A stretch of 64,000 nt of DNA, taken from Magallana gigas (Eukaryota). The stretch covers positions 15,438,001 to 15,502,000 of the forward strand of contig NC_088861.1 of assembly GCF_963853765.1 (NCBI RefSeq), read 5' to 3'. Both the position numbers and the translations under genes were made by a program. The notes beneath the pieces are model-generated. The model did not search any database, was not told the origin of the DNA, and was given only the letters and a program-made list of their open reading frames with translations. Below, piece by piece: positions 9,691 through 63,550 of this stretch; position 1 is the first letter of the stretch, and each line of letters begins with the position of its first letter.

Positions 9691-10795
9691 ATGTATCTAA
9701 GAAGAAGCGTTGAATTAATATTTTTGATCAAGAGCGCGTAATGTCCTTAATTAGAAGATTGAAAACAAAAATAGACGTAATTTATTAAGCACATGTACAT
9801 ATATATAAGATATATATGCATGTAAATAAAAGAGGGAACTTAGATTGATTTTAAAAAATAAATCATTTGACTGAGTTACTTTGATATTAACGGATACATA
9901 TTTGACTGTTTGATACACGAAGAACAGAACGGCATGATTGTAATTGATAATACATGCTTTTTTGCTTACAGATGTAACAGCAAGGCTAAGAGAAGTAAAA
10001 TTACAAATCTGCGTTCATGTAAAGCTATTTGTATTTTATTGAATAATAATAAAAACATTGAACTTTAAGAAAAAATGTTGTTCTACAAAATGATTATATA
10101 GTGATGTACAGTTAAAATGGATGTACTTATCAGTTTGTTTGTCAATGAGAAAAAATAGAAAATTATGTTTAAAAACAAAGAACACACTGACTCGTTCTTG
10201 TTTCTAGTTCGTTTGTTTGTTTGCTTTATTTTGTTTTTGTATTTTTAAATAGTTTTTTAGGGGGGTGTAGTTAGGAGAAGATTAAAACTCTAAGAAAAAA
10301 ATATGTTAACGTTATTCATTTTAGATTCTTTTAGATAATGTTAATAATTTTATAGATTGCATCAATAAATTAATACTATTTTTGTGTTGATGAAATGAAA
10401 GCATGTAACTAATTTATGGCATAACAATCAAGTCTATTATGAGCAAAAACGTGACGCGTTAGATACTTTACAAGGGACACAACACCTAGTACTTTACTTT
10501 AGTTTTGAAAGTTTCTGCTCTGATGCTCTTTATTTATAAGCCGTCATAAACAAGAAAGGTTTTTTAAGATTTATTTTTCTTCATAGTTCGAAAATTCATA
10601 GACAATGAAAGGTTTTATCTTTGCGTTTACAGTCAGTGGTTTCTTAACTTCCACAAAAGGTTAGTAAATGCATCTTTTTCGTAAAGTGAAAGTAAGCAAT
10701 GGTCATGCTGAATCCACATAGATAAAACGCTTAGATTTCTTCTTGTTGTTAATTGGCGTAAAGTCAAGATTTATCTCTTTGAAGGCAAATTATGA

Positions 10796-11006
10796 TACTG
10801 TGGTTTTATTAATATTCAAGGGTATCAATTTTCGTGGATAAAGTGAAAATCACAGTTTTAAGGATACGTACATTCGAGGTCAATGACCCTATCAATACAA
10901 AATCTTAATAGAAATTGCACTGCAATGAACATTTAATTTCGTGGATCAACTTAACAACAAAATCCACGAAAATTGGTATTCCACGAATATTGATGAGACC
11001 ACAGTA
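10796..11006. mobile_element. Tc1/mariner-type MITE in gene A intron 1
   Basis: Ends TACTGTGGTT... and ...GACCACAGTA form inverted repeats with TA flanks; ~210 bp, non-coding. Confidence 0.65.
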
Positions 11007-13469
11007 GTTGATAGTTTATTTCTGTTTCTGTAAACTAAAGTCAGAGACTTTGTGATTTTTTTTCTTAGTACATATATTTTTGGATAAAAAAACGATATGA
11101 TGAACTATTCATGAATTTATGAACCAAGTAGAACAAAATCCCATAATGTATGGGCGAGCAAATGCACAGCGTTTAAAAATCAATATTTCATTGTAAGTTT
11201 TAATGGGACAACAATTGATACATGTTGTCAGAAAAGTATGATAAATTTGCTAAAGAGTTCGATCAATCAAAACCTTCTAAAAAGGGGAAGTGGTTATTGT
11301 TGTATTTTGATCCCTACGAATTTGATTAGTATCCATGAATGTAAGTAAGCAACGTGTGTCTTTCAACTTCGTGTTTTATATTTCATGCTTATATCTGCAA
11401 CCATACCTTTAAATCCAATTTAATGTCAATACTGTCTCCGATTTTTTGTCAGCTAGTATGAATAGATCAGAGCTAAAATCTGCATGAACCCCAGGCAAAT
11501 ATAAATATTTACTTCAGAGGGTATGTAACCGAGTTATATGCAACTGGTGTACATATAAGGACATGTACTAGGTATCAGCCTATTTTTTAATGAGTAGATG
11601 TGGTTGAGTTGAGTTGAGTGTCGGTTGAGCCTCTTAAGCGTCCGCACGTTCATTTTACTCCTTACATTTTTACCGCGTACCGCCATTCTTCTTACATATA
11701 AATGTTTTTGAAATGTATACACTCCCTTTTGATTTCTTTTTCATTTTAGGTCAATGTCAGTCTAATGGTCAGTATGATTTACATTATTTTAATATTCACT
11801 ATCCATTTAAACAACAACATTGACAATCAATATACTTTAAATATTATACATTTAATTAAATATATTCTCCACTTATCTTTAGATGGTAAAAGTTTAATAG
11901 CTAGCTGCGTGGGATCAGCAAAATATGGACCAGCTGTCTACGTGGATTTCTATAAAATCAACCGACCATGTACTTGTATCGTGACCCCATCGTTTGTTGG
12001 AGACTTGCTAGTTGTATGAAGGAAAGTAATCGTATCGGTATGCAATACGCAAATTGTCATTAACAAAATGTTTGTTATGGGTTGTTCTTTACAATATGTT
12101 TCATCTCAGTTATTGAACGTCAACATCAATCAACCAGTGGATGTTCGAGCAGAATACTCATCACAATATACATCAGGAACATTTTTTCATTGTATAGGAT
12201 TTCAACAGAACGGTATGATTGATAGTATATTACAAGATTTAAAGATATCTTAAGTTGATTGTATATCTACAATGGTGTTCTATATCATGCTATGAATGAT
12301 GAATATTCTTAACTTCTTAAAATGTGCAAATTTTAAATTACATAATCAAAAAACTGAGTCATCGTGTTATTTATTATACAGAAGAAATCACCTGTCACAT
12401 ATTGTTATCACTTTATTCAAGTTATCTGGGTTGTATATTGATTAGTATCCGTATGTCAATGTTTTGGTATTTTTAATGAACAAAGGTAATGTAAAAAAAG
12501 CAACATTTACGTTTCTGTGTTAGAAAAATTGGTACCATTTTGACGAAAAAAAAACATTTTATTTTTCATGTATTTACAATTTTAGGTGGAATGAATGGTA
12601 ATCTAAGTGTAGTATGTGGAAGTCCCCTTGCAACAGCGTCAACAACAACAACAACAACAACAACAGCAAGAGAGTCAACACTAACCATAATAGCAACAAC
12701 TTCTACAGCTAGTTCACGGTTATCTTCTGTAGTTTCATCTACAGAGCCGACATCTGCATTAATCCAAAATGATGTGAATGTCACCGAGACCACTGCCACC
12801 ACTATGTCAAAAGAATGTATATGTGGTCACAAAGATGAGGTTTCCGGTAATTATATACGTATCATTTTCTAAACTTTTCAAACATAAGGATAAAAAGCTA
12901 GCTTTGTCAAAGGAATGGGGTCTTTTGTCAATAAATTAATTCTAAATAAATTCATTTCGTTATCTTAGAGCTAGAGACCACATGATTTATGATAAATTTA
13001 TTTTCATAATGAGTTGACTAGAGAGATTATATCTATTTGCATGCATCATGTATTTAGTAATGATTCTACTGCTCTTAGCATCTGTAAAATGAGTTTACAC
13101 TTCTTTGTTTTCATTTCACAACATAGATGAGTCCCTTATATCCTTACAAATCCCTTTGGCTATTTTCGTGGTAATTTCCATTGTTTCAACAATAACGAAT
13201 ATGTACTTCTTTATCCACATCAAATTGAGGTAGTTTTTCATTGTTTTAATTTGATATTAACATGGCATTGCATGTTTTTCACTTCATTCAGTAACTAGAT
13301 GATACCTACACATGTAGCATTCGTAAAAGCTTATATACAGTGAAAGCATATATACAATGTATTTAGATTTTTTAAAGTTAAAGTCTTGAAACTTAATTAA
13401 AAGTATTTGAAAAGTTTTATAACATGATCTGAAAAAACATGTAAGAAAAAGCATTACTTTAATAAATGC

Positions 13470-24600: not shown

Positions 24601-27600
24601 ATTGCAAATTATCTTTTGATAACCTGTAAATTGACTTAAAGCTGTCAAAGCATGTCCACACTTTACTACTTTTTTGCATTTCGAAATAGTTTATCGATAA
24701 TAAAAGTAAGTTTTTGATTATTCTCATCAAATTGCTATCGGATAAAATGTGTTGAAATATAAGAAGTGTAGGCAGTAATTCTGATGCAGGTGTTTCATAG
24801 TTTATTGACAAGTAATGTTCATGTATAAGTAAAGTTCTTTCAAAAGAATAAGTGTTGATATTATCATTTAAAAAGTTGTATGATTTCCTCAGAATTATTT
24901 GTGCGTACGTTGTTTTAAGCTGAAGAACGTTTTATTCTCATACAATGTCATTTTTAAGGCGTCGAGCTAATGCTCGGCAGCCTTCTAGCGATCGTCTGGA
25001 TTGGCAATCGTCCAAATATTCATGCTCTGCACCGCCTTTTAAATGCGCTTAAGAAATAAGTTCCTTAAAGTATTAAACGTATTACAAGATTTTTATTCCA
25101 TTTATTCAACTAAATTGTGTACAAAAAACCCAACTTTGCCTCCCTGGTTATCGACTACTCATTGCATAAGACTTCGTATGAATTAGCTTAATCAAGAAAT
25201 GGCGAATGAATAAGGTGTAAAAATTCACTAAGTATTATTTAAGTTCATCGATTACATTTTAATTGTAGACCGTGCCCGATAGAAATAAAATTTGATATGT
25301 AAATTTATTTGTTATCGGGCACGGCCTTCAAAATAAATGTAAGCGATAAACGTATCTAGTGATTTTGTTGCAATAAATGAACACGATAATGCAGTTGGTT
25401 TAGTCGAGCATTTTAGATAGCACGTGTTGTGAATTTGTTTGTAAACAATCGCACCAAAGGTAATCTTGTTTCAAACGGGAATCATGCTGATTCAAAACGG
25501 GCGAACGTAAGATCAAGATCTATGACATCGATCGCTGATAAAATCAAAAAAAACTCAATTTTTTGGTTGGTTTGTTTAATTAAATTAAATCCTTGTTTTT
25601 ATATTTAATGATACTTAAAGAGGCGAGAAAAGGTTCACAAATAGATGATGCAGCAAAACTGACGTCTATGTTGTTGTGAGACATGTGCTTTGACAACACA
25701 TAATTACCATTTCAATGTAATATTGAAAACTAAGTTTACCTCAAATTCGCACAGCCGATTACAAAATAATGACCTACACATCAAACATTTCAAGCAACCG
25801 ACAGTACAACGCTAATAGTTAGCTAGTCAGTAGACATTATTCATAATGTATTGGTATATATTTTTTGTTCCACGCTTTAAGAAACGGCAATTTAGGAATA
25901 AATTAGAAACAAGAACAATTCGTAGTAATAACAATTCAATAGACATGTGACATGTTTAACAATTCAAATTAAATAGACCTTTCTTTTTTTATTGTAATAC
26001 CCTTTTAAAGTGATTTATTGATATTGTTCTTATTTCACTTTATGTACCGCGTTTAAGCAACAGCCATGCCAAGGTTATCTTGCAAAATTAACGATACCCT
26101 AAAGGCTTGTTTTGGGTTTTTTTATCATAAATAATTTCTCTTCCTGTGTTTTCAGGTGGATCGAATGGCAATTTTAGTGTGATGTGTGGATATCCATCAG
26201 ATACAGCAACAACAACAACCTCACCAACAACAATTTTCACAACCACTTTAAATTCAACACAGTTGTCACATGCATCGTCTCCTATTCCATCATCAAGGGA
26301 ATCTTCATCTGTAGTAAACACCATCAAGAAAACAGATGTCACCCTATCCTCAAGCACGATAAATGTCAGTTATGATTCCTTGTCGATTGAGACAACGCAA
26401 GATGCTCCGGAAATGTTATGTAAATATACATCTAATCGGTGTTTCTTTGTAACGAATTTACATAGGTTTTCACTATTTTGGGGGGAACACTAAAACATAA
26501 AACTTATTTGTTTATAAATTAAAAATTAATTCATAAGGCACCAGTTTATAACTAAATTTAATATTAGCAACAACGCGCTATTATGACAACGATGTGCATT
26601 TGCATGTATTATAAGACTAAGAAAAAAATACGGACGAAATTATACATGTCTGATCGTTTAATTATTTAAAGAGGCTTGCTCCTTAGGTGTTGGGTCACGT
26701 ATCGTCGGAAAATTCTGCATCACATATTTATGTTAGTAGTATATTTATATTTTACTGTACCAAATAAACTATATTGAATAAAAAAAAATTTAAATTACAT
26801 TTTTACAGAATTTAGTGAGGGACTATATTTTGTGGCGGAAGGTTTTCAAGAAGAAAATAGACAATTTTCATAATTCAATAGTTTTAGAGTACACAGTTAC
26901 TTTAGCTTCCTGATTGTTTGTGCAAACCAAACTTCTGGATAGTGTATAACGATATATTCGTTTTGTTCTATAAACATATCTAAACAATATGTTGATATTT
27001 CTTTGGATATATTTCGGCATATTAAGCTTAGATTTCATAGAAGTTATGAAAAAATAAACTCCAATTTTGGCCTAAAATTAGCTTTTTTCAAGCTATATCT
27101 CAAATTTTTAAGATGTGACCCCTACTTGTTTTACTTTTAAATGATACATCAAATGTATGTTTATTTGTATGCAAAGTGTTGGACAGATGACATAACTATA
27201 CTTTTTTTACTTGCGTTATAATTTGAATATATCAAACATTTGTAACATCTGTTGTTGTGTTCATTATGTACTGGCCTTTGAAGCCACCAGTAAAGCAAGA
27301 GATTTCAAACTTTGACTTAACTTTACTTTTATAGTCAATACATGTGTTTAAATTCATACTGTATTAAAATCATTACTAAATAATAGTTCAAACTGTATAT
27401 ATTTGTTTGATTTCTTCAAACTATAAATTTCTATGTCAAATTTAAGCAAAAAATTCAGGAAAATTATCATTTCTGTTTGAGGTCCTATATTTTAATAAAA
27501 TGTCATGTGACATGGGTCACAAAATTAATACAATGAACATTTTAGGTCCCCATCTTTATATCAAAAACGTTTTCTGATAAATGACATTACTATTATTTCA

Positions 27601-30041: not shown

Positions 30042-30219
30042 AAACAAACCTGGGACTCAGATTGATACAAGAATGTTATATATTATGTATTATAATGCAC
30101 CTTCGAGGTGGGAATGAACGAAATGAACAGTACTTGGAAATACGGTGTCGGGAGAATCTGAAAACCAGTACGACTCTATCTCACGAGGGAATAATAACAT
30201 GAACACAAATACCTTATAA
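30042..30219 (+). pseudogene. Orphan, decayed ITAM-type terminal exon (A/D type) downstream of gene B
   Basis: CTTGGAAATACGGTGTCGGGAGAATCTGAAAACCAGTACGACTCTATCTCACG (from 30133) is nearly identical to the gene D last exon and reads LGNTVSGESENQYDSISR...*. It is preceded by a ttttag acceptor; the 5' half is scrambled with a stop. Confidence 0.8.
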
Positions 30220-40880: not shown

Positions 40881-40934
40881 TTTTTTTTTTTTGGGGGGGG
40901 GGGGCACTGAACATAGATCTAGAAACGTATCATT

Positions 40935-42570: not shown

Positions 42571-42954
42571 TCACACACACTAAGTCATTTTTATGCAAAA
42601 CATAAAAGTATATCATTTATATAACGTTTCAGATCGTTCAGGTCTTTAGTATGTCCCGGTCCAAACACCGTTTTACTTCCGGTTTGCCAGAGTAACTGCA
42701 TAGGAGAGTTGATTAAAATCAACTCCCAAAAACCAAAATATTCTATTGTCACATTTATGTTTATAACTCATTTTTATCCACCAATTAATGTTGATAATGT
42801 TCAAAATCAATAAACTTTTATATATGACTACAAGCACATATATTCTATAGGGAATAGACTATAAACAAGAGGCACGATTTTTACTGCGAAACTGAGAGGG
42901 TCAAATAAAACCACGTGGGCTTAATTTAAATGACAATAACATTGGCATGGGTGT

Positions 42955-44480: not shown

Positions 44481-45699
44481 GAAGATTGCCATCGGAGACC
44501 ATGTAGATTAATGGAATAGGAATTAAAGCCGAATTAAACTTAAGTTTTTATCATGAGGTTGTAGGGGTTTTGCTAGTCAGGTTGGTAAGTGCTCCATGTG
44601 TTCCATGTCTTTACTTTTTAAGTTATAAATCACGTGTGGATTTTCGTTTAGAGGAATTTGTGAATAAAGAATATATAAACACTCTCGGTACATGCATCCC
44701 TCAGGGAGAGTGGTATTTACTCCGTTTATCTCCCGACTAAAATAAAGAACCACCCCATCCATTAGCACAATTCCTAACCTCCCTCCCCACATCATGATGC
44801 CTGCAACAAATCTTTTTAGGTCACCTGAGTAAACTCGGGTGACCTATTGCTATCTGTTTTCGTCCGGCGTCGTGCGTTAACATTTTTACACTTTTAACTT
44901 CTTTTTAAAAACTAAAATGCTAATTGTTAGCATTTTTTGTGTGAAGCATCTCTATGGTAAGAGAATAAGAGGAATCTGAATTGTGAATTTCATGGCTCTA
45001 CCACCCCCGGGGCGCCACAGGCGGAAAAAACAACGCATGGTTATGATACCACTAACCTCTTTACCTTAATTGTGAAATGGCCCCTGGGTCAGGACCTAGT
45101 TAGGGGGGGGGCAATTTGGCCATAGAGTGTTAAAGCATAAAAAGGTTTAAAAATGTTCATCTATACTCCTAAGAAAAACTGACTTCATAATTATGTTTAA
45201 CAGGAAGTCCTCGACTAACAGTATAAATTGAATGTCCCCTGGAGTATGGGTTATGACTCTAGGACAGGGCCAAAATAGTCATATAGTGTTAATGCATTTA
45301 ATGTTTAAAAAATTGTCTTCTCTAATTCAGCTGATACTGAATAAAAACTGACTGCGTATAAAGGAAGAAAATAAAGCCGTCTATCAAAATGTTAAATTTC
45401 ATGTCTCCCTATATAGGGATTTGAATCAAATCACTCATGTATAGACGACTTTTTCCCGCAATTACGTCATATTTTCTGTGCACATAAATAGTCACGTGAA
45501 GCACCCGCCATTACAACCGTGAAACCTTGAAGATGTATAAAGGCGGAAGTGGGGAATCTTGTGCAGTTTTTTAACTGTACTGTGCAGTTTTTAATTGCAC
45601 TATCGACAGAAAGGTGTTTTATTTATGGAAGCAATCAATATACAAAGAGCACGGAGTTAATCTGCACAAAGATTGCCCCTGTGTCGTCCCGTTCAGCCT

Positions 45700-48560
45700 G
45701 CATAAAATACTCAAAGAGGAGAGCGAGAGACTGAAATGGCAGCGGGCATTACATCGGAATGTTCGTGTGTTCCACGCATTTTATTGACGGGCGACCAACA
45801 GCACGATATCCAACACCCAGGTTAACTGCGCTTGCATCGCTGTCGAACGGTAGTATGCGGAAAAACTCACAGGAGCTTGGTTGTTGGATAGTGAAGTTCT
45901 GAATTTTTTGTTCCCGAAGAAAAAATTGATTAAGATTGGTAATCTTAGATGTATTTCTATGTATTGCATAAAATAAATACACTAAAACCCCCCGTTTCAG
46001 TCATGTTAAAAAGCAACGGAAGTTGATGCAAACTCTCCATGTAATCACTGAGGAGATCCGAAAGCATTGGATAAACCAAGAGGAATATCTTTTCGCGGAA
46101 GTTTTGCTCTCTCTAGATTTATCATACATTTTCGGAACATCTCAGTGATTATATGGAGAATTTACGTCACTCAAAACTAAACTTCCGTTGCTTTCGATAA
46201 GTTTGGCAAGTATCTAGTACATTTCGGAACGATGTGTTTATTATGCAGCATACAGATGAAGTCAGACGATAGGAATAAGTCATTTGAATATTTTCCAAAC
46301 TATATCTTGTCAGAAATCGTTGGAGAAATTGAAGAACTTGTTTAAAACATAGCTTGAAACGAGGACCCCCTATAAATCCAAGATGGCGAGTGTCGTCCCT
46401 TTACTTTTTTTAATGTACATTGAATACACTTTTTTAACATGACTGAAACGGGGGGGGGGGGGGGGTTCAGTGAATTTATTTATTGCAATTCACAGAAATA
46501 CTCATAAGATTACCAATCTTAATCAATTGTTTCTTCGGGAACAAATAATTAAGAACTTCACTATCCAACAACCAAGCCCCTGTAGAAAAACTCGGGTTGA
46601 CAATACGGTCTGCCAACCCGAATATTTATGAATGAAAACATTAACATAACTGTTACAGTGAATATGCATGAGACTATTGATATGCTATTTAAATAAGGTT
46701 GCATATAAAATGTGTGAAAATAAGGTTTGTATAATCAGGGATGTCCTGGTATATTTTGAAGTATATTCTTAGCTTGACAGAACTGTCAAGTTCTTTGTGT
46801 GTTGTATTGGTTTCTGAAGATGAAGTTGAGTCTGTCAACACTGATCGGTCTACCATTGAACCAAAAACAACATCATTTTCCACTCAAACAGAAATGAATG
46901 AAAGCAGATCGGCACGCAGTGGATAGATCCCACACTACACGAGCAGGAATATGCAAGGCCCTGTATTTCAGGATCTAGAGATACAGGAACACCAATGAGA
47001 CCCGGTGAGACTGAAGACAAGGGAGTAAACTGCATCTCTTTACATTATCGCTTAACCTCTGCTGACATATCGTCCGACTTCTTATCCTTGCTGTACACAG
47101 GACTGCCTTTGAAAAATTTTAAAACTGTTTTGAGTGTTATGCAAAATATGGATGACCCACTTAAATTTACCATTCCTGTTTCAGGTCAAGTTTTGTTGGT
47201 TCCTAAAAAGTTACGGCTAAGTCTACTGTTCGGGGATATTGCCAACAGATATGGAATACCGGGGTCTCATGTATGCACCATTTTAAATTAAAGATTTGAA
47301 ACTGAAGAACCTATAAGTTTTGCTTCCCCGTGAAACAATTCGAGCAACTAGGCCAGTCTTTTCGTGAAAACTATCCAAAGACTACAATCATCATTGATTG
47401 TTCCGAGACTTTCAATTAACGAGCAAAAAACTTGTAAACAAGAGGTGAAACCTACAGTCATTACAAGTCCCACAATACAGGAAATTATGTGGTTGGTATC
47501 GCATAACACGGACAAACAATGTTCATTTCTAAGGGTTTTGGGAGACTTTCTAGTGATAAAGCAATTGTAGAATAATTTGGCATTTTAAACTACCGTCTTC
47601 AAGGAGATGAAATCATGGCCGATCGTGGCTTTACCATTTGTGACTTGCTCTTTCATCTGAAAGTGAAACTTAACATTCCAGCTTTTACGTATACCAAAGG
47701 TAAAGACCACCTTTCAGAAGAGGATGTAAAAAAAACGCGACGAATTGCCATCGTACGGATTCCCATGGAAAGGTCTTTTGGACGTTTAAAGGTGTTGTGT
47801 TCCGCTTACTAAGTCAGGTAGTTCCAGTTACCTCCGCAAAGAAGCTCCGTGACTACTTGATCGTTTGTGTTGCATTGGTAAATTTGAGATCTGATCTTAA
47901 TAAAGATGATGATGAGTGCAAATGATATTTCAAAGTTTCACTGATGTAACAGTAAATATTTGAATGTTTCACGGATGTATATGACACAAAGTTGAAACAT
48001 AAATTTTGTGTTAGGTTTTATATACCAGTCTAATTAAGGTCTTTATGATGCCTTGAGTATATCTGCTGATAGTCTTACAAATGCTAATGATGTTTTTAGG
48101 TAAAGCCATATTTTGAATTAAAACTATTGTTAGAAGTCTTTATTAATATGATGAAAATTAAATTCTACATCATTTATATCTTTTTTAAACATTTATTTGT
48201 GTAAAATTGAGGATAGAAGATGTGGTGTGATAATGAACGTATTTTGAATACTTTTCATGCTCAGGAAGAAATAATTAACACAGACTGAAAAAATAGTTGA
48301 CTGTATAATTTCAGTTTTACGTCTGACATCACAAACTTCATCTATCTGCATATACATGTATATGCATCAATTAGAAAATTTAACATATTTGTTACTAATC
48401 TTAAATCTGCCAGATAAAAAGTCATTGACTGTTCTTGGTAAAAGTTTTTGAAGTAAAATAAACATAGTCTTGAAATAGCTGCTTTACAAAACTGTTGGTC
48501 GTATTGTACATCAATGACCTTGTAATATAACAAGTTTGCACAGCTTCGGTAAATCAGACA
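45700..48560 (+). mobile_element. Decayed ISL2EU/PIF-Harbinger-type DNA transposon: THAP + HTH + DDE_Tnp_4 transposase relic, with a convergent YqaJ-like ORF remnant
   Basis: Reconstructed WQRALHRNVRV(C)STHF.DGRP (THAP), LLLVPKKLRLSLLFGDIANRYG (HTH), IIDCSE, TYSHYKSHNT, IMADRGF and RIPMERSFGRLK. The minus-strand fragment 48342-48533 (VIDVQYDQQFCKAAISRLCLFY) resembles the C-terminus of ISL2EU YqaJ ORFs. Confidence 0.75.
45869..46584. mobile_element. Mutator-like MITE (~140-bp imperfect TIRs, 9-bp TSD GAAAAACTC) nested in the ISL2EU relic
   Basis: Arms 45869-46013 and 46429-46583 are reverse complements. GAAAAACTC lies at 45860-45868 and 46585-46593. There is a second internal inverted repeat. 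Confidence 0.8.
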
Positions 48561-48733
48561 GTTAATTGTTTAGCTGTGCCAAATTAGCAAATTTTGATGC
48601 ACTAACAACGTATTATACTATAAATACTATACATTCTATTGGTAATTCGGTACGATCTCTACATTATGGTTGATAACCGGTATAATGCAACTTGTTTTGT
48701 TAAGATGCTCTGCATTTTCAGTCTAAACGATAG

Positions 48734-48880
48734 NNNNNNNNNNNNNNNNNNNNNNNNNNNNNNNNNNNNNNNNNNNNNNNNNNNNNNNNNNNNNNNNNNN
48801 NNNNNNNNNNNNNNNNNNNNNNNNNNNNNNNNNNNNNNNNNNNNNNNNNNNNNNNNNNNNNNNNNNNNNNNNNNNNNNNN
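48734..48880. other. Assembly gap (147 N)
   Basis: Run of n characters. Confidence 1.
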
Positions 48881-51800
48881 TCTTTGTTTTAGTGCATGTT
48901 TCCTCTGTTTTAATTGTTTAAAATTTTCTCTTTACTAACCATATTCAGCTGTGTCAAGTTACGAATTATAAGCAAGATACAGAGCTTTGCTCACAGAACT
49001 GAGGCCATGCTTTTGTTCATTCTGAATAGGAAATAAAAAGTTTAAAAATCTTAAGTTGAATTTAACTCTTGTGAACAAAAAATTGACTCAAACCAAGCAG
49101 AATTGTGAGTTCTGTATCTTGCTTATAATTCTACGATTGACGCTGACATTTTGATTTATCACTAGAAATGTCTCACTAAACGTTAAATACTTGTACAGAA
49201 AAAACTAAAGGATGATATCCTGTAACAACTTTTTGGGGCCCCCACCTTATATGATGAAACTACACCAACTTTGTTGGTTTTTCAGACACAATTAAATTAA
49301 AACGACCTCTTTAAAACAGTTTAAAACATTACTGCTACGGGGATAAATGTATTATCGCTATTTTTAAGAAAACATTACAGCGGAAAATCATCTTGATTTG
49401 TAGCCATTTGTTAATGTTGATTTTTAATAAAAATGAAAATAAAGGGTACGTGGGCCTTAGTAAAACAGAGCAATAAGATTTTTTTCAATAAAATACAATA
49501 ACTAGCTAGTACAATGTAGTTGAAGATGAATATGTACCTATATGCATATTCTCATATATAATCTGATCGTTTTATAAAGTAAGGGGGCATAACTAAAATA
49601 AAGGAAACTGGAAGTTAACAGTGTACCCCCAGCAAAAATTTAGTTTTTTGGGTAAAAATGGTATTGCTAAAATGGTACAATGTCAAAGATTAAGTGAAGG
49701 AAAATAAGTGTAAAATTTTGATACACTTTTTTTTATGGTATCCTTTTCTTGTTTTTCTACCGAGGGGCCATATGGCACAATATCCTTTGAACACCCTTAT
49801 AAAGCCATTGTTGCTCAGGTGAGCGATGTGGCCCCATGGGCCTCTTGTTACCGTGCGTGGTCGGTAAAAAAACCTTTTTTTACGGAATGGTAGGATTTAT
49901 TCTTAAAACAACGACAGGTAGTTTTTTGTAAAACAATGTGAATTTTAAACTTATAGAAGACCATTGCCAGCTGTTAACATTCATTCTCTCTTTACTCGTT
50001 AAATACATTCAGCAAGTATTTCCACAGATCATTCTATCATTTGTTCGGTCGAGTTAGTTTTGCATAATTTTGTAATCAGCCTATATCAAACATCCATTGT
50101 ATCTTGACACATAATTTTAATCATATTAGCAAGAGCGAAACGTTAAATGCAATCGGTCAAGCTTACCCATTCTACGTTTTAAACTAAAAGATAATTCCCA
50201 ACGTTTTTCTTTCAAATGAGAATCGCGACACGCATTCCTATCTGGTACATTGTATAAACAATTGTTTGAAATAAAATTTGTTAAGACGCTTTAAAATTTA
50301 GAATAAATAGAAATAAATCAATTATGTACTGTAAATTATGAAAATATTGGATGACTGTGTAAAATCGAAATTCTATGGAACAAGGTAACAAATTTACCTG
50401 TATCCTTCATAATTAAATCGCACGTGAGGGAATTGGATTACATAAACAGTCAACTCGTATGTAAATAATTTCGTGTAGTTTATGCATTATCTTCATTTCT
50501 TTTACACTTAAGTTATTATTTGTTATGGAGACAAACAAATTGTGTATGAATCCTATATTTTTGTGTATGGGTGTGTAAAATTGTTTACTCGTTAAATATA
50601 AACAGTGCATGGCTACTGTACATGCTGCTTTTCAATAAAATACAAACATGAAGCATTACAAGTTAATGCAATACGTTTCCTTAATTCTAATCTTAAAAAT
50701 TAATTTTGATTTTGCTTGTTTTATCGTTTTTGTTCGTGTATCGTGAAATTTCAGTAAGTTAGTGATCGTCCGTGTATCGTGAAGAATCGTTGGTGTATCG
50801 TGCGTGATCGTTCGTGTATTAGAATTGTGCGTGTCGTTTGTCAACAATAACGTTGCTACCACTGTATGCCCGACTTGACCCCAACATTTATTTTAAAAAC
50901 TATAACTTAGAAAGATTAAAACTGTTTTTGAACTTACAATTAAAAATTTGGAAATTTTAAATATATGAGTTTATAATTTAATCTATTGCTTGTTTCTAAG
51001 AAAGTACGACATGCACAATTTAAATGTGAGTTTTAAAACAAAACAAAAAATTTCATTGATTATTCATGTGGGATATAAAGGTAGCAACAATACAGCGCAT
51101 GCGCATATCTAGAGAGAAGGGATCAAAAAGATTGTGAGCCCTGTGGAAAATTAATTCAAATTTCTTAAAATTTACATTAATAAACAACCAGAAAATGTGC
51201 CCCAGACCCTTCCTGAAAAACTCAAATAACCGTCGGAGCACCCTGGAATATTTTTCTGGATCTGCGCCCGCAGAAGAAATACGTAATCCGCGATAGTCAG
51301 CATAAATCATAACCAGTTTAAATCTTCAAAGAAAGCGTTTTTATTATTATATTTATATCTTTCTTTTTACAAAATAATTAATTAAATGTGAATAAATTAC
51401 TTCTCTTCTTATATCCAAGGTAAAAATGCTGCAGAATTTTTGTTTTATTTAAAAAAAAAATTATTTTTTTTTTTTTTGGGGGGGGGGGGTATTATCAACA
51501 CGTAGTGAGAGCTCTATTTGGCCACGTAGTGTTGGTATTATCATTTGACTAATGAAAGTAAACGTTGGAATAAAGACCCCCTTTGTTTACAAAGAAGCAC
51601 AGATTCATTTTTTTGACGCTGCACAGGTAACACTTTGGAATACCGATTTTGTTCTTTCGGACAATTCATTTCAAAAATACAAACGCGTGACTTTAATTGT
51701 TACAACATATTACTCATAATTATAAAAAATGATTTTTAGTAATACTACAACTGCAGTTTGATTGAATTATGTCACGCGTATGCATTTGATATAAATATAA

Positions 51801-54443
51801 TGAAATATTAAAACATTTTCGAATAGTAGTTAAACAGATATATTATACAAATGTAAATTATTTTTGAAGTCTTTTTATACATATCTCCATCCTTCGTTCT
51901 AGCTTTCATGTAAAATTTAGCTAGCAAGTCGTCTGACTTCTCGCACTCGAAATTTACGAAGCCTCCGCTTTCGACTCGAGATATTCCCGAAATAGCTTAA
52001 CGGCTGTTGCAGTTACCCTGTTGAAGTGTTCCTTGCATCAACATTTTCCATTATAACTTTCATTTCCGCGTCATTAATTGTCGCAAAACGACCGTTTACT
52101 TTAACGTCTGCAACTTCCATCTTTGTTGTTTGTTTTCGCGGAGAATGTTTTTGGTTGGTTGGGGTGAATCACGCCAGCCAATCAAATTCTTTTTTAACAT
52201 TAGAGCAAAATTTCCCTTATCTATATTTAGAAAGTACAGGTCAATCCGAGTTTTTAAAGCTTATTTTTAGAAAGTACAGGTCAATTCGCATTTTTATACT
52301 TCGACACCTGATATCAAAAGAAGTAATGATAGAATTTGTTATAATGCATGAAAATAATATTAGATTTTATTAAGTAGTTGTATTGAGAAACTGAAATCGT
52401 AAATCGGTAAGGTAATGTCGTCAAATAAATTTCTTGTGGTATGAAAATGCCTGTATCTTAAATGCCAGATTTCTTTATGAAATGCTAGATAAGTAATACA
52501 TATATCTTTCTTCAGAAAGCACGGTTCATAATGAGTTTGATCTATTTTCAGGTCAATGCCCACCTAATGGTACGTTTTGTAAACTGTATATTACATAATA
52601 CGTATAAAAGTAAGCATTTATCTCAAGTTTATCTGAATAACAACATGATGCGCAAATAAGTAAAAATGTGTATTTTTTATTTCCCTTATTTTCAAGTTGG
52701 ATACCTTGCTGTAACCAGTTGTGATGGATCAACCAAAAATGGACCATATATTTACATTGACTTCTATAAAATCAACCGTCCATGCTACTGTACGGTGATC
52801 ACGTCTTTTAATGGTGATCTGCTCGTAACGTCTATGAAAGGAATCGGTCGTATATGCGAAACACAAGTAACCGTTGTAACCGTTTACACTTACAGATATA
52901 TGTTTAATTGTCAGGCATCAGAAGTATCTGCCGTTTTACATGTCGAAATCAATCAATCGGTATCCGTACTAGCTGAATACTCATCACTTTCTACATCAGG
53001 AGCGTTCTATCATTGTTTGAGATTTAACGAAAACGGTACAATTACTTACTTGTCGTTCATTTTTAAGTTATGATTGGAGTTAAGGTTTGTAATGTTCGTC
53101 TTTTGAATAATTTGACCGATTTATAAACTTCCTCTTTAATGTTACTAAAAGTATAAAAAAAAAAAAACCCAATCATATTTACATGTATGAAAATGATAAA
53201 AAATACCGCTTTTTTCACATGTATCATTTATACAACATGGATACATGTATTATGCTGCTTTTTACAGTGAAGTTGACCTTTATGAAATGCAAATTAGTTT
53301 TACGATGATTGTTATCATAATATCTATGTTCCAAAGTATGATTTTCAATCTATTGCCAAAAAATGAATGAATGTTTCAAAAGAAAGCAGTTTTCAAATGC
53401 ATGTACTTGTTCTACAGGCTTGGATTTATTATTACATTTTGTTCATACTCTCAGGGGGTTTAGGTGGAAATCTTAGTGTAGTATGTTGAAGTAACCATTC
53501 AGCAGAAACAACATCAATGGAAACATCTACTACAACCGCTTCGTCTACTACACGATTTATAAGTACAACTTCTGAGTTGTCATCAGTGGAACTTATAACT
53601 ACATCTGCAATAAATGAGAATATATCGGATGCTACTGGGTCAACTGCTGCTACTTTGTCGGAGGAAAATAAATGTGATTCTTTAATTGGTAGATTTTTTT
53701 TTTAATATATGATATCTAAAAATCCAAACCTGCTGATTATTGTCAACTTTACGAAAGAAGTTTCGTTTAAACTATTGTCAAATGCAATAAGTTCATGTAG
53801 AACCTGTAGAATTTGGAAAATACCTTAAACGTTTCTTTTCTTATTTTAATAGACAGTATATTCTCACTCTGTAACGCATTATCGAAAACTAAGTTATAAA
53901 TACAGAAAATATGCTTAATTACATAGAATATCTTATCTATCATCTTCTTGTGCAGATAAGGGTCTTTTTAGGGATGATGTCGATATGCAGGGCTGATTTG
54001 ATCCGTATAGCACCCCTTTTGTAATTACTGTTTTTCCGCATCCATATTAAGGTCGTATTTTAGCAAACGATTTTTTCTTATTTCACTCTATTTCAGCCGA
54101 GTCACTTTTGTCCTTACAAATTTCGTTGGCTCTATTCGTGATGATTTCGACAGTTTCAACAATATTGAATATATATTTTTGTAGATACATCAAAACAAGG
54201 TATGTTTAATAAAAGTTTATTTTTATATTTGTACATCATTCACAGACATGATATGATAAAGAAAATCTTTTATGATCTGTTTGATTTGTATCGAACTATG
54301 TGTGGTTTTTATTTATTTTTTAGCTTTACCTAATGGATAACAAAACGTGATATTAGATAAAGAACATATACGATTATGATAACAAATCTTGAGAGTTTCT
54401 TATCTAAAATAACCTTACAAAAGTAACACCCATTTTGACGTCA

Positions 54444-54660
54444 TACTGTAGATTCTTTATTAAACGCGAGAAATTCATATTCGCATAAAATCGACAGAAG
54501 CAACATTTGCAGATTTTAAAATCTTGTTTTTATTTTTTCAGTTTTGAACTGTAGGAATTTATAACAAAAAATTGTGCTCGTGATTTTATATTCTCGCGAT
54601 TTGATACAAAATAGCGGAATCGCGGAATTAAGTACTCGCGTAAAATAAAGAATTTATAGT
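54444..54660. mobile_element. Mariner-type MITE in gene D intron 5
   Basis: TACTGTAGATTCTTTATTAAACGCGAG versus CTCGCGTAAAATAAAGAATTTATAGT, imperfect TIRs. Confidence 0.6.
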
Positions 54661-55150
54661 TTGCAGTGTTATATAAAACAAATTATTTCATGGATGATTT
54701 AACCATGTATTAAGTCCAACATCAACATGAAATAAATGTATAGCTATTATTTTTACACCACTACAAAATATGGTGTGTATATTTCAAAAACATTGTCATA
54801 ATAACTTTAAAAAGTAATCTGATAACAAAGTTATAAATGTAAGCAAGCTATGTTTTTGCAAGCCAGCATTGAGTTTACATGGGCATATTTCAAGGAAATT
54901 ATATTTTTTCACAATAGAAAGAAATCTTGGAACGGGAAATCTAACTGTAAAGGTATAAAAGACCATCGAAGTGGGACAGCAACTAATGCTGAAACCTACA
55001 CAGAACTTGGAAATACGGTGTCAGGGGAATCTGAAAACCAGTACGACTCTATCTCACGCCAGGAAAACTACATAAACACGAATGTCTTTTAAACTTTTCT
55101 TACAGGTGAATTCATGTTACTTGCAATTGGACTCAATATTGGAAGTAGTA

Positions 55151-57318: not shown

Positions 57319-57446
57319 TAAGCATTGAATGCTTATTTTTTAATGTCATCAGTCCTATGACACATCAAGCGTTGCAGACAAATTATCATACCGGGCTTAC
57401 GCGGTCATAGGACCGACGAAATCCAAAACTAAGCATTCAATGCTTA
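57319..57446. repeat. Palindromic hairpin element
   Basis: taagcattgaatgctta...tcagtcctatgac / gtcataggaccga...taagcattcaatgctta. Confidence 0.6.
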
Positions 57447-59900
57447 TATTTTTATTTTAATACTAATGTCTATTTGTAGGTAATGTTGTGTATCGCCGCT
57501 ATAAAGCAATTATTTACGCTCTTTGTCAGGAATATGGAACAGCCATGCATATTAATATGTTATTTATTTAGCTTCCGCGACAAAAAATAAAGTGCCAGAA
57601 ACTTTAAGGAAATTTTTTTTTATCAAGGATAGATATATATTAATGACTGTTTTTAAAAGTACATATCAAATTGGTTATGTAAAATTGAAAGTTTCGTTTA
57701 ATCGTAAAGAAAAAAATATGCTCAAAACACGTGGAAACGTTTATATTTGAGCTTAAGGTGCATAAATTAGCAAAGTGTATTTATAGAAAATTAAATGTTG
57801 CAGCTTTCCAATAAAAATGTAAGGAGTAATATACCCTGAATGTAAATATTATCTTAATTAAAATGTGCTTGATAATTTTTATGTGGTTTAAGAAACATTA
57901 CTTATTTTTGCATTAATTCAAATTACGTTTGCCGTATTACCATACTTTAAATATTAAAAAGGGATAATAAAAAAATTAACGCACTTTTTTGTTTTGATTT
58001 ATACAAGCTACATTGTGTGAAGGCAACTACGATGCATCATTGCAGAACAAAATCTTCATCCTGCTTGAGCAAGCGAGTCATTTTCTTTTGGCAATCGTAA
58101 CTCACAAATCATCAACGTGTATGTGTTTTCATATATCTTTTATAATATGTATGAATATTACTCTAATTGCGTTATTCATCTAGATCTTATGTTATGTGAA
58201 ATTAAAAATGCTTCCAAGCAACAATGCAATCATTTATTTGTTTTTGTTATTTAATCACTTTATTAATTAACATACCAGATATATAATCGTCAAAAACGTA
58301 TTTACATGCATCAATCTTACAATTCCGTAATCATTGGTGAGAGTATCGTATAAAAATCGTCTTCCATCTTGCTTGCTCGTTGGAAGATATCAATGCGTTC
58401 GTTACTTAATCGCCGAAATTCGTACCTGAATCGCCACAGCTCGTCCTGTTGCACAAAATCGCAAAAAAATGTACATTGTCAAGCAGATATCGTAGTCGAG
58501 TGTCTTAGATTCGAAAAAAACATTGTCTGTAGAATTATCGCAAGACTGAAATAGCGAATAATGGCGATTTTTAACTTTTAGTAATTCGTGGGCAATCGTA
58601 GTAATAATCGTGACAGTGTGACCGTGGCTTATTAAGTACAATGTTTATAATATCTCAAACAATAGACAGTTCTCAAATGATAACCGATATTAGCACAATA
58701 AATTAAGTCCATTATTTTAGCAATAAGGAAGTAGATTAACTCTTATCTTAATCATATACTGCACGTGTCATTGGCGTATAGAACGGTTAATTTTTTTCTG
58801 ATCGACTTAATATATTATATCATAAACTAGAACTAAAAGTTGATAACCGATATGAGAAATGTGTTTTCATCAGTACAAATAATTTTTATATATACAATGT
58901 GATATATTTAATTTGCTATACATTTACAATTTGAAAATTAAAAATCATCATAAGACACTCACATACTAAAATTTCAAGAATATATGTCAAGGTCTATGCC
59001 TCATTTTCCTACTCTATTTGATTCGGAAGTCAAATGAATTTAAATGTTCCTGATTTTCTAATAACAATTTTATCAACACAAAATATGTCTCATAAAAATT
59101 TCATACGCAAATGGAATTAAACATACTTAAATATTATGTGAGAAAACCTCAAAGAAAAGGAATAAAAATGTTTACATTATAATAAATTTACCTAACAGTA
59201 TTTAATGAATTGAAATAAAGAAATAAATCCAGGACGTCCTAGGAACGGCTTGTATTGATGTGAACAAAGTTAACTTGTCTGCAGTTTGTTTGTTTAGTTA
59301 TAAATAGCTGTACGTTAATTATGATCCATGTTTATTAAATAACTGTGACAATGTTTGCGCAGTAAACGTATTATTGAATGACGATCAAAGTGCATGTGAT
59401 TTAATGTAAGAAACCAAATTTTTACTAATTTTGTGCTGATTTATGAAGAAAATATTTAGATTATCCATAAGGTAATCGGCAGGCGTGTGGTTTTCTCTCG
59501 GTAGGTGCGTTTTCACCTGCAGTCGTGTTTTAGTATGACCGGTCTTAAAACACAAAAATAAGATGCAAAGCATATCTTGATTTGCTTAAATATATAAAGA
59601 TTAAAGGTCATGTCAAGAATGATAGAAATATGTTAAGTGGTAATTTGCGCATTATAGATTTCGTTCAACAGTTGTCCACAATGAAACATCAAAAGAGCAA
59701 ATTCAGTGACAACGGATCAATGATATAACGGAAATAACACACACATTGATTGTTTTTTTAAAAGTGTGTAATCTGAATGCTGACTGAACTCGTATGAAAA
59801 CAATCAGGTTGTCAATTTAAAACTAAATAAATAACACTGGTGCTATGAAAAAAAATTGTTTTCAACTTCCTACTTTGTGTGATTTGATTTGAGGGTAGAA

Positions 59901-59955
59901 ATGAAAGGTTCATGTTGTGTGATTGTGATCGGTATGTTTTTTGTGACAACAAATG
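59901..59955 (+). CDS. Signal-peptide first exon of a probable fifth paralog (gene E); downstream exons not found in the window
   Basis: MKGSCCVIVIGMFFVTTN-G|gtaagt, 55 nt, phase 1. It is homologous to exon 1 and the upstream promoter sequence of gene B. Confidence 0.65.
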
Positions 59956-63493: not shown

Positions 63494-63550
63494 AAGAAAG
63501 GTTCATTTTGTGTGATTGTCGGTATGTTTTTGTAACAACAAATGATAAGT
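63494..63550 (+). pseudogene. Dead B/E-type leader exon (ATG>AAG, indels, donor gt>at)
   Basis: aagaaaggttcattttgtgtgattgtcggtatgtttttgtaacaacaaatgataagt aligns with 59901-59961. Confidence 0.7.

What the first reader, a model, noticed from the sequence alone, without database searches (positions are those of the whole stretch)
10605..59955. Candidate invertebrate paired-receptor cluster: one non-Ig ectodomain coupled to either ITAM or ITIM/ITSM tails
Seen in sequence: four tandem (+) genes share one six-exon plan (55-nt leader, 18-nt micro-exon, 330/339-nt Cys-rich exon, S/T stalk, TM, tail; phases 1,1,1,1,2). They fall into two classes with unrelated TM and tail exons and distinct leader exons. 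A and D have an MKGFIFAF leader and a YxxL-x8/11-YxxL/I tail; B and C have an MKGPL leader and an ITIM/ITSM tail. Established knowledge: a shared ectodomain with opposite signalling motifs in tandem clusters defines vertebrate paired receptors (KIR, LILR, Ly49, SIRP, CD300, Siglec), and ITAM/ITIM-like motifs occur in Hydractinia Alr proteins, which are Ig-based. Inference: this is an independently evolved activating/inhibitory recognition system (immunity or allorecognition) in a bivalve, built on a non-Ig domain. I do not recognise it as a described family.
Basis: partly seen in the sequence, partly recalled or inferred. Interest (0 to 1): 0.92.

Follow-up and report, generated by a model that had tools for sequence, protein, structure and literature searches.

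The report
Oyster paired ITAM/ITIM receptor gene cluster
This stretch of Pacific oyster chromosome is part of a roughly 670-kb array of about 30 undescribed, oyster-only surface-receptor genes that join one CUB-like outer domain to either an activating-type (ITAM) or an inhibitory-type (ITIM) tail, and that swap tails by deletion between neighbouring genes, much as vertebrate paired immune receptors do.

Summary
Four + strand genes share a six-exon plan: 55-nt leader, 18-nt micro-exon, 330/339-nt Cys-rich exon, stalk, TM and tail, with phases 1,1,1,1,2 and GT-AG at every intron. A and D end in YTEL-x8/x11-YDSL/I. B and C end in NPLY plus ITIM/ITSM.

A's stop (12017) is a segregating null allele: two RNA runs and one DNA run read TCA (Ser), and RNA contigs join A's exons as modelled. 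D's stop (53487) is untested. The N gap lies in D's intron 1, so frame is not at issue.

The genome is Magallana gigas. The family is one array on one chromosome: at least 33 ectodomain exons, about 20 ITIM-type and at least 10 ITAM-type tail loci. Named relatives occur only in oysters (Ostreidae), have no Pfam family, and are all "uncharacterized". The ectodomain model is CUB-like, not Ig.

ITAM-type genes nest among ITIM-type ectodomain relatives. One intact ITAM gene arose by an 8-kb deletion that fused an inhibitory gene's ectodomain and stalk to its neighbour's TM and ITAM exons.

Opposed signalling, ligand and cell type are inferred, not shown. I rate it a new variant of a known kind, with high interest.

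The parts
10605..13755 (+). Gene A, ITAM type, 308 codons. Exons 10605-10659, 11750-11767, 11883-12212, 12586-12846, 13127-13229, 13596-13755. Tail YTEL-x8-YDSL plus YMNT. In-frame TGA at 12017-12019 in this assembly.
   Evidence: Model. RNA contig X19 record 17 joins exon 1, the micro-exon, exon 3 and exon 4; position 12018 reads G>C (TGA to TCA) in X17, X19 and X9. The RNA-derived allele P0141 has Ser there and runs through exon 5.
15672..28502 (+). Gene B, ITIM type, 414 aa, intact. Exons 15672-15726, 23455-23472, 23571-23900, 26156-26419, 27777-27852, 28001-28502. Tail NPLY, VYAV, VYAEV, LLYMEV, VCYAQI.
   Evidence: The full-length spliced relative P0150 lies on a 1493-nt RNA contig.
30040..30218 (+). 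Decayed ITAM-type tail exon downstream of B. It keeps ...SENQYDSI... but has lost the first and third Tyr. No TM-A exon was found nearby.
   Evidence: blastn 30127-30221 versus 55000-55094, 84%. Sequence read. Genome search hit with 1 TGA.
31211..38296 (+). Gene C, ITIM/ITSM type, 401 aa, intact. Exons 31211-31265, 33294-33311, 33414-33743, 35695-35949, 37600-37678, 37828-38296. Tail NPLY, VYAV, VYAHV, TCYAEI. The LLYMEV ITIM is removed by 10-nt plus 23-nt deletions relative to B.
   Evidence: Allele-like protein P0147 is 88% identical.
43930..55092 (+). Gene D, ITAM type, 304 codons. Exons 43930-43984, 52552-52569, 52697-53035, 53464-53688, 54097-54199, 54918-55092. Tail YTEL-x11-YDSI plus YINT. 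In-frame TGA at 53487-53489 (Gly in relatives).
   Evidence: The status of the stop in other individuals was not tested.
   Evidence: The gap is flanked by AT-rich non-coding DNA. The right flank (49333-49803) is homologous to B's intron 1.
59901..59955 (+). Leader exon of a fifth gene (E; MKGSCCVIVIGMFFVTTN followed by GT). Its ectodomain exon lies just beyond the window at C9:15503630, and an ITIM-type tail follows at C9:15506899-15507328.
62831..63545 (+). Two degenerate leader-like exons. The A/D-like one at about 62831 is interrupted. The B/E-like one at about 63490 has no ATG and its donor is ATAAGT.

Best explanation
The window holds five members (A-D and the start of E) of an oyster-specific family of type I membrane receptors.

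Each protein has these parts:
- a signal peptide;
- an ectodomain of about 130 aa with eight cysteines and a CUB-like beta-sandwich fold, encoded by the micro-exon, the Cys-rich exon and the start of the stalk exon;
- a Ser/Thr-rich, presumably O-glycosylated stalk;
- one of two phase-compatible but unrelated TM+tail cassettes.

Cassette T has a highly conserved TM and a cis ITAM, (A)ETYTELGNTV(x0/3)SENQY(D/E)S(L/I), usually followed by a YxN motif. Cassette I has a small-residue-rich TM and a tail of about 150 aa carrying LPDNPLY (NPxY), several YAxV sites and up to two canonical ITIM/ITSM motifs.

Proposed mechanism (inferred). The variable ectodomains bind a ligand that is still unknown. 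On clustering, Src-family kinases phosphorylate the tails. T-type members then recruit Syk, giving activation or phagocytosis. I-type members recruit SH2 phosphatases (SHP/SHIP) and perhaps PTB adaptors through NPxY, giving inhibition or internalisation. A cell would therefore integrate opposing signals from near-identical ectodomains, as with vertebrate FcgammaRIIA/IIB or CEACAM3/CEACAM1.

Shown here:
- the gene structures;
- transcription and splicing;
- conservation of both cassettes across Ostreidae;
- the CUB-like fold (predicted);
- intermingling of tail types on the ectodomain tree;
- creation of an ITAM gene from an ITIM gene by an 8-kb deletion;
- a segregating null allele and differences in gene content between assemblies.

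Inferred only: phosphorylation, SH2 partners, opposite signalling, the ligand, the cell type, and any immune role.
For: Structure and splicing: one search gives the models. In one search, RNA contigs join A's exons 1, 2, 3 and 4 at the modelled sites. P0141, P0020 and P0150 are complete or nearly complete CDSs on RNA-assembly contigs of 0.95-1.5 kb.

Family size and place: searches find at least 33 ectodomain exons, about 20 ITIM-type tail loci and at least 10 ITAM-type tail loci. All lie on the + strand of C9 between 15.14 and 15.82 Mb, and none elsewhere in the 564-Mb genome.

Distribution: only 123 representatives among 1.84 billion proteins. The named ones are all from Magallana/Crassostrea and Saccostrea and are called 'uncharacterized'. 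There is no Pfam family.

Fold: the AlphaFold2 model has pLDDT 89.9 and pTM 0.83. The best structural match is the spermadhesin CUB domain (Z 8.6, rmsd 2.9, 101 residues), and at least 20 of the top 30 matches are CUB domains.

Motif conservation: ETYTELG...ENQY.S(L/I) is invariant from M. gigas to C. virginica. LPDNPLY, VYAxV and LLYMEV-type ITIMs are conserved in Saccostrea and C. virginica. TM and tail exons have dN/dS of 0.2-0.4.

Pairing: the ectodomain tree needs 7 changes for 7 ITAM rows. An AU test rejects one clade for five securely assigned ITAM genes (p 7e-42). L017 (ITAM; NCBI protein P0149, intact) and L019 (ITIM) share the same leader, 94% ectodomain identity and 98% stalk identity. 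L017 and L014 share 100%-identical TM and tail, yet their ectodomain exons fall in different, well-supported clades of the tree.

Origin of a pair: duplicate II is collinear with duplicate III up to 15261426/15296373. It then jumps to 15304418, an 8.0-kb deletion that removes the TM-I exon, the ITIM tail exon and the 5' half of the next gene. A remnant of that gene's exon 4 is left in the new intron.

Signalling context in the same species: the ITAM of CgIgR, DYTELGQCDPETPYEKL, has the same YTELG half-site and x8 spacing and binds CgSyk (PMC6994640). The ITIM receptor CgNCAM1 acts with CgSHIP2 (PMC11841013).
Against: - There are no functional data of any kind.
- The tissue or cell type of the RNA runs is unknown; they are oyster metatranscriptomes.
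- In this assembly both ITAM genes in the window carry premature stops (A is polymorphic, D is untested).
- Within the window, A/D versus B/C ectodomains are only 45-58% identical, so these four are not tight pairs.
- The most conserved I-tail motifs are NPxY and a non-canonical xVYAxV rather than ITIMs, and C has lost one canonical ITIM. 'Inhibitory' may therefore be too simple.
- YTEL and YDSL also fit the generic YxxPhi sorting signal.
- The x11 spacing of D-type tails is outside the strict x6-8 ITAM definition, although it lies within the x6-12 range used for Draper and CgIgR.
- The fold assignment rests on one aligner at middling Z. Foldseek found nothing at E<0.01 in the PDB.
- Tail assignments for genes to the right of the window rest on coordinates only.
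Confidence: 0.6

Rival explanations
1. These are endocytic, phagocytic or cargo receptors rather than opposed signalling pairs. On this reading the tyrosine motifs act mainly as sorting or engulfment signals. NPxY in the I-tail would bind PTB adaptors of the CED-6/GULP, Dab or Numb type, as in LDLR and CED-1/Draper. YxxPhi in the T-tail would bind AP-2. The two cassettes would route the same ectodomain to different trafficking fates.
For: LPDNPLY is the single most conserved I-tail motif, and one Saccostrea member repeats it four times. YTEL and YDSL fit YxxPhi. Several I-type members lack any canonical ITIM (P0009 and P0147; P0147 looks truncated at its C-terminus). CUB domains occur in endocytic receptors such as cubilin, which is among the structural matches.
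Against: The two T-tail tyrosines keep a fixed spacing and invariant flanks across genera, which generic sorting signals do not need. The same YTELG-x8-Y half-site pattern binds Syk in oyster CgIgR. Canonical ITIMs about 25-30 residues apart are conserved from Magallana to Saccostrea. The two roles are not exclusive: Draper combines NPxY and an ITAM.
Confidence: 0.2
2. The family is a self/non-self, gamete-recognition or cell-adhesion system rather than a pathogen-directed immune system. It would still signal through ITAM/ITIM tails, but its rapid evolution and haplotype variation would be driven by conspecific interactions such as fertilisation, chimerism or settlement.
For: Ectodomain dN/dS among close paralogues is high, about 0.6-1.6 in most pairs. 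Gene content differs between M. gigas assemblies, and a null allele segregates. The best structural match is a spermadhesin, a CUB protein of sperm-egg binding. Comparable polymorphic ITAM/ITIM clusters serve allorecognition in Hydractinia and Botryllus.
Against: Oysters are solitary and no allorecognition phenotype is known to me. A structural match to spermadhesin indicates fold only. No expression data tie the family to gonad.
Confidence: 0.12
3. The family is a decaying lineage-specific expansion without a present function. The motifs would be relics, and many copies would be pseudogenes.
For: Stops occur in A, D, L005 and several tail exons. There are relic exons and genes lacking the ectodomain exon.
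Against: Many members are intact. Spliced transcripts exist for both types. Both cassettes are conserved across genera, with dN/dS of 0.2-0.4. A's stop is only one allele.
Confidence: 0.03

Closest known systems
Vertebrate paired receptors with the ITAM in cis: FcgammaRIIA/FcgammaRIIB and CEACAM3/CEACAM1
   Same: They are type I receptors with similar ectodomains coupled to either a cytoplasmic ITAM(-like) motif or ITIM/ITSM motifs. The genes are clustered. Pairs arise by recombination or exon shuffling of TM+tail exons, and the ectodomains evolve fast (PMC2832619 and PMC5112662, listed).
   Different: The ectodomain here is a single CUB-like domain, not Ig. No sequence homology is detectable in any part. 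The inhibitory tail also carries a conserved NPxY. The organism is a protostome, so the origin is independent. Function is untested.
KIR / LILR / Ly49 / NKG2 families (activating members signal through DAP12 or FcRgamma)
   Same: They are tandem arrays with gene-content haplotypes, null alleles, hybrid genes formed by unequal crossing-over, and activating members nested among inhibitory relatives. Ly49 and NKG2 show that paired receptors need not be Ig-based.
   Different: The oyster T-type members have no charged TM residue and carry their own ITAM, so no adaptor is implied. The fold and the lineage also differ.
Hydractinia Alr family (allorecognition complex) and Botryllus fester/FcoR families
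   Same: They are invertebrate, clustered, polymorphic receptor families in which members carry ITAM-, hemITAM- or ITIM-like motifs. In Botryllus FcoR3/4, alleles and splice forms swap ITIM and hemITAM (PMC12582321; bioRxiv 10.1101/2022.03.04.482883).
   Different: Those are a cnidarian and a chordate with Ig-like or other ectodomains and a known allorecognition phenotype. Here the animal is a solitary mollusc, the head is CUB-like and no phenotype is known. Tail swapping here is by genomic deletion between neighbouring genes.
Oyster IgSF receptors CgIgR/CgIgIT2 (ITAM to Syk) and CgNCAM1 (ITIM to SHIP2)
   Same: They are from the same species. CgIgR has the same YTELG-x8-YxxL type of ITAM, and the downstream partners are demonstrated experimentally (PMC6994640, PMC11841013).
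   Different: They are single genes with Ig/FN3 ectodomains. They are not a paired family with a shared ectodomain and are unrelated in sequence to this family.
CUB domain (Pfam PF00431): spermadhesins, C1r/C1s/MASP, neuropilin, Kremen, cubilin
   Same: The domain is a beta-sandwich of about 110 residues. The best structural matches are almost all CUB domains (Z 6-8.6).
   Different: There is no match to the Pfam CUB model at E<=1. There are eight conserved cysteines in a different pattern, against four in canonical CUB domains. Foldseek gives no significant PDB hit.
Drosophila Draper / C. elegans CED-1 / MEGF10
   Same: These invertebrate engulfment receptors use an NPxY motif and an ITAM with x11 spacing (Shark/Syk). 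This is from established knowledge and was not tested here.
   Different: Draper carries both motifs in one tail on an EMI/EGF ectodomain. Here the motifs are split between two alternative tails on a CUB-like domain.

Membership tests
Paired activating/inhibitory receptors (functional class) | Activating and inhibitory members share closely similar ectodomains | tested here: met
   L017 (ITAM) versus L019 (ITIM): 94% ectodomain and 98% stalk identity, with the same leader. L014 (ITAM) versus L013 (ITIM-type tail, decayed): 85%. Within the window the identity is only 45-58%.
Paired activating/inhibitory receptors (functional class) | Inhibitory members carry canonical ITIM/ITSM ((S/I/V/L)xYxx(I/V/L) or TxYxx(V/I)) in a long tail | tested here: met
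   B has LLYMEV and VCYAQI; C has TCYAEI; Saccostrea P0041 has LLYMEV and VEYAEI; C. virginica P0043 has LMYLDV. Not every member has one.
Paired activating/inhibitory receptors (functional class) | Activating members carry or recruit an ITAM (YxxL/I-x6-8(12)-YxxL/I) | tested here: met
   A and relatives have YTELGNTVSENQYDSL (x8). D-type members have x11. The motif is invariant across genera. There is no charged TM residue, so the ITAM acts in cis.
Paired activating/inhibitory receptors (functional class) | Tandem cluster evolving by duplication and recombination that exchanges tails | tested here: met
   A single array on C9. An 8-kb deletion created L017. Tail types are intermingled on the ectodomain tree, with AU p 7e-42.
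Paired activating/inhibitory receptors (functional class) | Opposite signalling outcomes via Syk/ZAP-70 versus SHP/SHIP after Tyr phosphorylation; shared or related ligand | not testable with these tools
   This needs biochemistry and cell assays. Oyster Syk and SHIP2 pathways exist.
Paired activating/inhibitory receptors (functional class) | Expression on immune cells | not tested
   RNA contigs exist in oyster metatranscriptome runs, but the tissue is unknown.
CUB domain family (PF00431) | Significant match to the CUB sequence profile | tested here: not met
   No Pfam hit at E<=1 for ectodomain exons or at E<=0.1 for full-length proteins.
CUB domain family (PF00431) | CUB beta-sandwich fold | tested here: inconclusive
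   VIA-align Z 8.6 to spermadhesin, and most top hits are CUB domains. Foldseek against the PDB gives E>=0.01 only. The model is predicted, not solved.
Immunoglobulin superfamily | Ig-like domain in the ectodomain | tested here: not met
   No Ig Pfam hit. Ig domains are not among the structural matches.

The most novel reading that the evidence does not exclude
Oysters have an NK-like, germline-encoded recognition system that varies between haplotypes in gene content and null alleles. It would be built on a CUB-like domain, and haemocytes would integrate ITAM and ITIM signals from near-identical receptors. Such a system could discriminate self or altered self from non-self (conspecific cells, transmissible neoplasia, or pathogens that mimic host ligands). 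It would be a third independent invention of paired-receptor logic, and the first in a protostome.
Probability: 0.12. Interest if true: 0.95.

Novelty: new variant of a known kind. Interest (0 to 1): 0.8.

Why it matters
Paired activating/inhibitory receptor families are central to vertebrate innate immunity, and their evolutionary origin is still debated. Outside vertebrates, comparable clusters are known from a cnidarian and a tunicate, both tied to allorecognition.

An expressed, oyster-wide family would show that the same genomic and signalling logic evolved independently in a protostome. It implements that logic on a non-Ig, CUB-like head, with the ITAM in cis, with tail swapping caught in the act, and with null alleles and gene-content variation.

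It would also give oyster immunology a concrete and tractable candidate for variable cell-surface recognition. That field matters economically because of OsHV-1 and Vibrio mortalities. Syk and SHIP2 assays already exist in this species.

Tried and rejected
- **Pfam.** Scans of the ectodomain, stalk, tails and full-length relatives gave nothing above threshold. The weak TMEM154, DUF6014 and Sortase hits were rejected as noise.
- **Foldseek.** Both models against the PDB gave no hit at E<0.01. The first AFDB search gave only an oyster paralogue (K1PYH7) and weak malectin/CBM-like jelly rolls. I do not claim a lectin fold.
- **Whole-cluster fetch.** I did not try another route, so genes to the right of the window are mapped by search coordinates only.
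- **'Both ITAM genes are pseudogenes.'** This was rejected for A: the stop is one allele. It remains open for D.
- **Leader type tracks tail type.** This was rejected. L017 (ITAM) and L019 (ITIM) share a leader.
- **Weak multi-domain hits to the profile.** P0102 and P0103 (Ig-rich) were rejected as spurious after Pfam. P0119 had no Pfam family and was not followed up. The Haliotis 'mucin-5AC-like' protein keeps the Cys pattern but only at hhalign probability 28%, so a wider molluscan origin stays a lead.
- **Literature.** Searches for accession numbers and for oyster ITAM/ITIM families found no description of this family.
- **Earlier scan notes.** There are none at this place.
- **Complex prediction.** None was run, because phosphotyrosine-dependent binding cannot be judged that way.

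Full report
**1. The observation**

I rebuilt the four genes from the sequence. Each has six exons: a 55-nt leader, an 18-nt micro-exon, a 330-nt Cys-rich exon (339 nt in D), a Ser/Thr-rich stalk exon, a TM exon and a tail exon. Intron phases are 1,1,1,1,2 and all 20 introns are GT-AG.

Leaders are MKGFIFAF in A and D and MKGPL in B and C. Self-comparison shows that the ectodomain exons of all four genes are related. The TM and tail exons match only within a class, A with D and B with C.

The tails read as follows:
- A: YTEL-x8-YDSL, then YMNT.
- D: YTEL-x11-YDSI, then YINT.
- B: NPLY, VYAV, VYAEV, LLYMEV, VCYAQI.
- C: NPLY, VYAV, VYAHV, TCYAEI.

**2.

- *Stops.* A has an in-frame TGA at 12017 (exon 3) and D has one at 53487 (exon 4).
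- *A relic exon.* A decayed ITAM-tail exon lies downstream of B at about 30040-30218.
- *A lost ITIM.* Relative to B, C has deletions of 10 and 23 nt that remove the LLYMEV ITIM.
- *A fifth gene.* The finding's end coordinate (59955) is the end of the leader of gene E, whose ectodomain exon lies just past the window. Two degenerate leader copies follow at about 62831 and 63490.

**3. The assembly gap**

The N run (48734-48880) lies in D's 8.6-kb intron 1, far from either exon, so reading frame is not at issue. Continuity across it could not be tested, and I did not fill it. The DNA to its right (49333-49803) is homologous to B's intron 1, which fits an intronic context. The left part of the intron holds transposon-like sequence.

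**4. Transcription, splicing and A's stop**

I laid public runs on 10500-16499.

An RNA contig (X19, record 17) runs 10548-10661, then 15 letters of the micro-exon, then 11882-12211, then 12585-12846. That is exons 1, 2, 3 and 4 exactly as modelled. A second RNA run shows the same joint between exon 1, the micro-exon and exon 3.

At 12018 the reference G is read as C in both RNA runs and in one DNA run, which turns TGA into TCA (Ser). One DNA run keeps G. An RNA-derived protein 94% identical to A (P0141) has Ser at that codon and continues into exon 5. A is therefore a working gene with a segregating null allele.

Complete coding sequences on RNA-assembly contigs of 1.0 to 1.5 kb exist for both classes: P0020 for the ITAM type and P0150 for the ITIM type.

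**5. The whole family**

The genome is Magallana (Crassostrea) gigas. NCBI proteins of this family sit on a contig of exactly the length of the window's contig.

- Searching the assembly with the ectodomain exon gave 32 matches. All are on the + strand of contig C9 between 15.14 and 15.82 Mb. One more turned up later.
- The ITIM-type tail exon matched about 20 loci.
- The ITAM-type tail exon matched 10 loci, plus five weaker ones. All of these lie in the same interval and nowhere else.

A profile of 26 ectodomains found only 123 representatives among 1.84 billion proteins. Every named one comes from Ostreidae (M. gigas, C. angulata, C. virginica, Saccostrea cucullata, S. echinata). Each is 'uncharacterized' or carries a spurious automatic name. 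A Haliotis protein is a weak possible relative. No Pfam family matches any part.

**6. The ectodomain**

Eight cysteines are invariant: one in the micro-exon, six in the Cys-rich exon and one at the start of the stalk exon.

AlphaFold2 on 17 full ectodomains gave pLDDT 89.9 and pTM 0.83, an all-beta sandwich. Exhaustive structural alignment put the spermadhesin CUB domain first (Z 8.6, rmsd 2.9, 101 residues). At least 20 of the top 30 matches were CUB domains. The exon-only model gave the same picture. Foldseek found nothing significant in the PDB.

I therefore call it CUB-like, clearly not Ig, and not a demonstrable member of the CUB sequence family.

**7. The tails**

The T cassette (TM plus tail) is strikingly conserved. 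LSLQIPLAIFVVIS...AETYTELGNTV(+/-3)SENQY(D/E)S(L/I)..Q(E/D)NY.N is nearly invariant from M. gigas to C. virginica.

The I cassette conserves LPDNPLY, GYS, (I/M)P(V/I)YA(V/I), VYAxVxK and an LLYMEV-type ITIM. Many members also have a terminal (V/T)xYA(E/Q)I.

Pairwise dN/dS is 0.2-0.4 for TM and tail exons. For ectodomain exons of close paralogues it spans 0.26-1.6, with most pairs at 0.55 or above.

In the same species, the CgIgR ITAM DYTELGQCDPETPYEKL binds CgSyk (PMC6994640), and an ITIM receptor works with CgSHIP2 (PMC11841013). The presumed partners therefore exist.

**8. Is it 'paired'?**

On a maximum-likelihood tree of 29 ectodomain exons, the seven ITAM-type rows need seven changes of state. 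An AU test rejects a single clade for the five securely assigned ITAM genes (p 7e-42).

The clearest case lies 180 kb left of the window, in three segmental duplicates.
- Duplicate I holds an ITIM gene (L018) followed by an ITAM gene (L014, which is NCBI protein P0151).
- Duplicate III holds an ITIM gene (L019) followed by an ITAM gene that has lost its ectodomain exon through a 1.26-kb deletion.
- Duplicate II is collinear with duplicate III up to 15261426/15296373 and then resumes at 15304418. This 8.0-kb deletion removes the TM-I exon, the ITIM tail exon and the 5' half of the neighbouring gene. It leaves a remnant of that gene's exon 4 in the new intron.

The product of duplicate II, L017, is annotated by NCBI as an intact 331-aa protein (P0149). 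It has the ectodomain (94% identity) and stalk (98%) of the inhibitory gene L019. Its TM and ITAM tail are 100% identical to those of L014. The C. angulata protein P0004 carries nearly the same ectodomain and stalk with the ITIM cassette.

Because both cassettes start in phase 1 and switch to phase 2, any ectodomain can be joined to either. This is how hybrid KIR-type genes arise in vertebrates.

**9. Variation between individuals**

Besides A's null allele, two RefSeq C. gigas ITAM-type proteins (P0134, P0138) have no ectodomain match above 60% anywhere in this assembly. Their stalk, TM and tail parts match A's locus best, at 62-88% identity. This points to gene-content differences or very divergent haplotypes.

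**10. Interpretation**

The most likely reading is a family of type I receptors whose variable CUB-like heads bind an unknown ligand. Their alternative tails would couple to Syk (T) or to SH2 phosphatases and possibly PTB adaptors (I). That makes it a paired-receptor system with the ITAM in cis, closest in logic to FcgammaRIIA/IIB and CEACAM3/CEACAM1, and of independent origin.

What is shown is the anatomy, the expression, the conservation and the mode of evolution. What is inferred is all of the signalling and the biology.

The main rival is a trafficking or engulfment role driven by NPxY and YxxPhi signals. A conspecific-recognition role is also open. A purely decaying family is largely excluded.

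**11. Novelty**

No paper, Pfam family or informative database name describes this family.

The concept itself is known from vertebrates, Hydractinia and Botryllus.

I therefore class this as a new variant of a known kind, of high interest to comparative immunology.

**12. Limits**

- Only 200 kb of the cluster outside the window could be read.
- Reads were laid on gene A only.
- Tissue of expression is unknown.
- The fold is predicted, not solved.

Noticed in passing
window 604-6118, minus strand: Three long overlapping ORFs (452, 729 and 695 aa) read as gag, protease-RT-RNase H and integrase. They look like an LTR retrotransposon with apparently open frames, sitting just upstream of the receptor genes. 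I described it only and did nothing further with it.
   Followed up: no
window 44500-48700 (for example the ORF at 46995-47291 and the inverted repeats 45869-46012 / 46431-46583): A GC-richer insert in D's intron 1, next to the assembly gap. One ORF fragment looks, by eye, like a transposase DNA-binding region. It probably explains the long intron.
   Followed up: no
window 42954-44479 and 61867-63431: A 1.6-kb block duplicated at 79% identity carries the A/D-type leader. The second copy's leader is broken and is followed by a broken B/E-type leader. This suggests that leader regions are duplicated and decay independently of the gene bodies.
   Followed up: partly
G000 C9:15506899-15507328, 15559166-15559553, 15573619-15574045, 15664802-15665231: In four genes of one subgroup (E/L011, L003, L005, L004) the ITIM-type tail exon matches B's tail in three pieces in different frames, with a TAA. 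If this shared frameshift pattern is real, the tail would be truncated soon after the NPxY motif and would lack ITIMs.
   Followed up: no
L031-L050, C9:15300000-15307300 (duplicate III): An ITAM-type gene whose ectodomain exon was removed by a 1.26-kb deletion lies directly downstream of the intact ITIM gene L019. Splicing from L019 exon 4 to this TM-A exon would give an activating isoform of the same gene. In C. virginica, ITAM-type and ITIM-type proteins carry the same LOC number (LOC111105461) in different annotation releases.
   Followed up: partly
P0097 (Saccostrea cucullata XP_062588891): This family member has a tail that repeats ELPDNPLYHGTYG four times and has no ITIM. It is an expansion of the NPxY motif.
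   Followed up: no
Together with the present family, this suggests that oysters have several diversified non-Ig ITAM receptor families.
   Followed up: no
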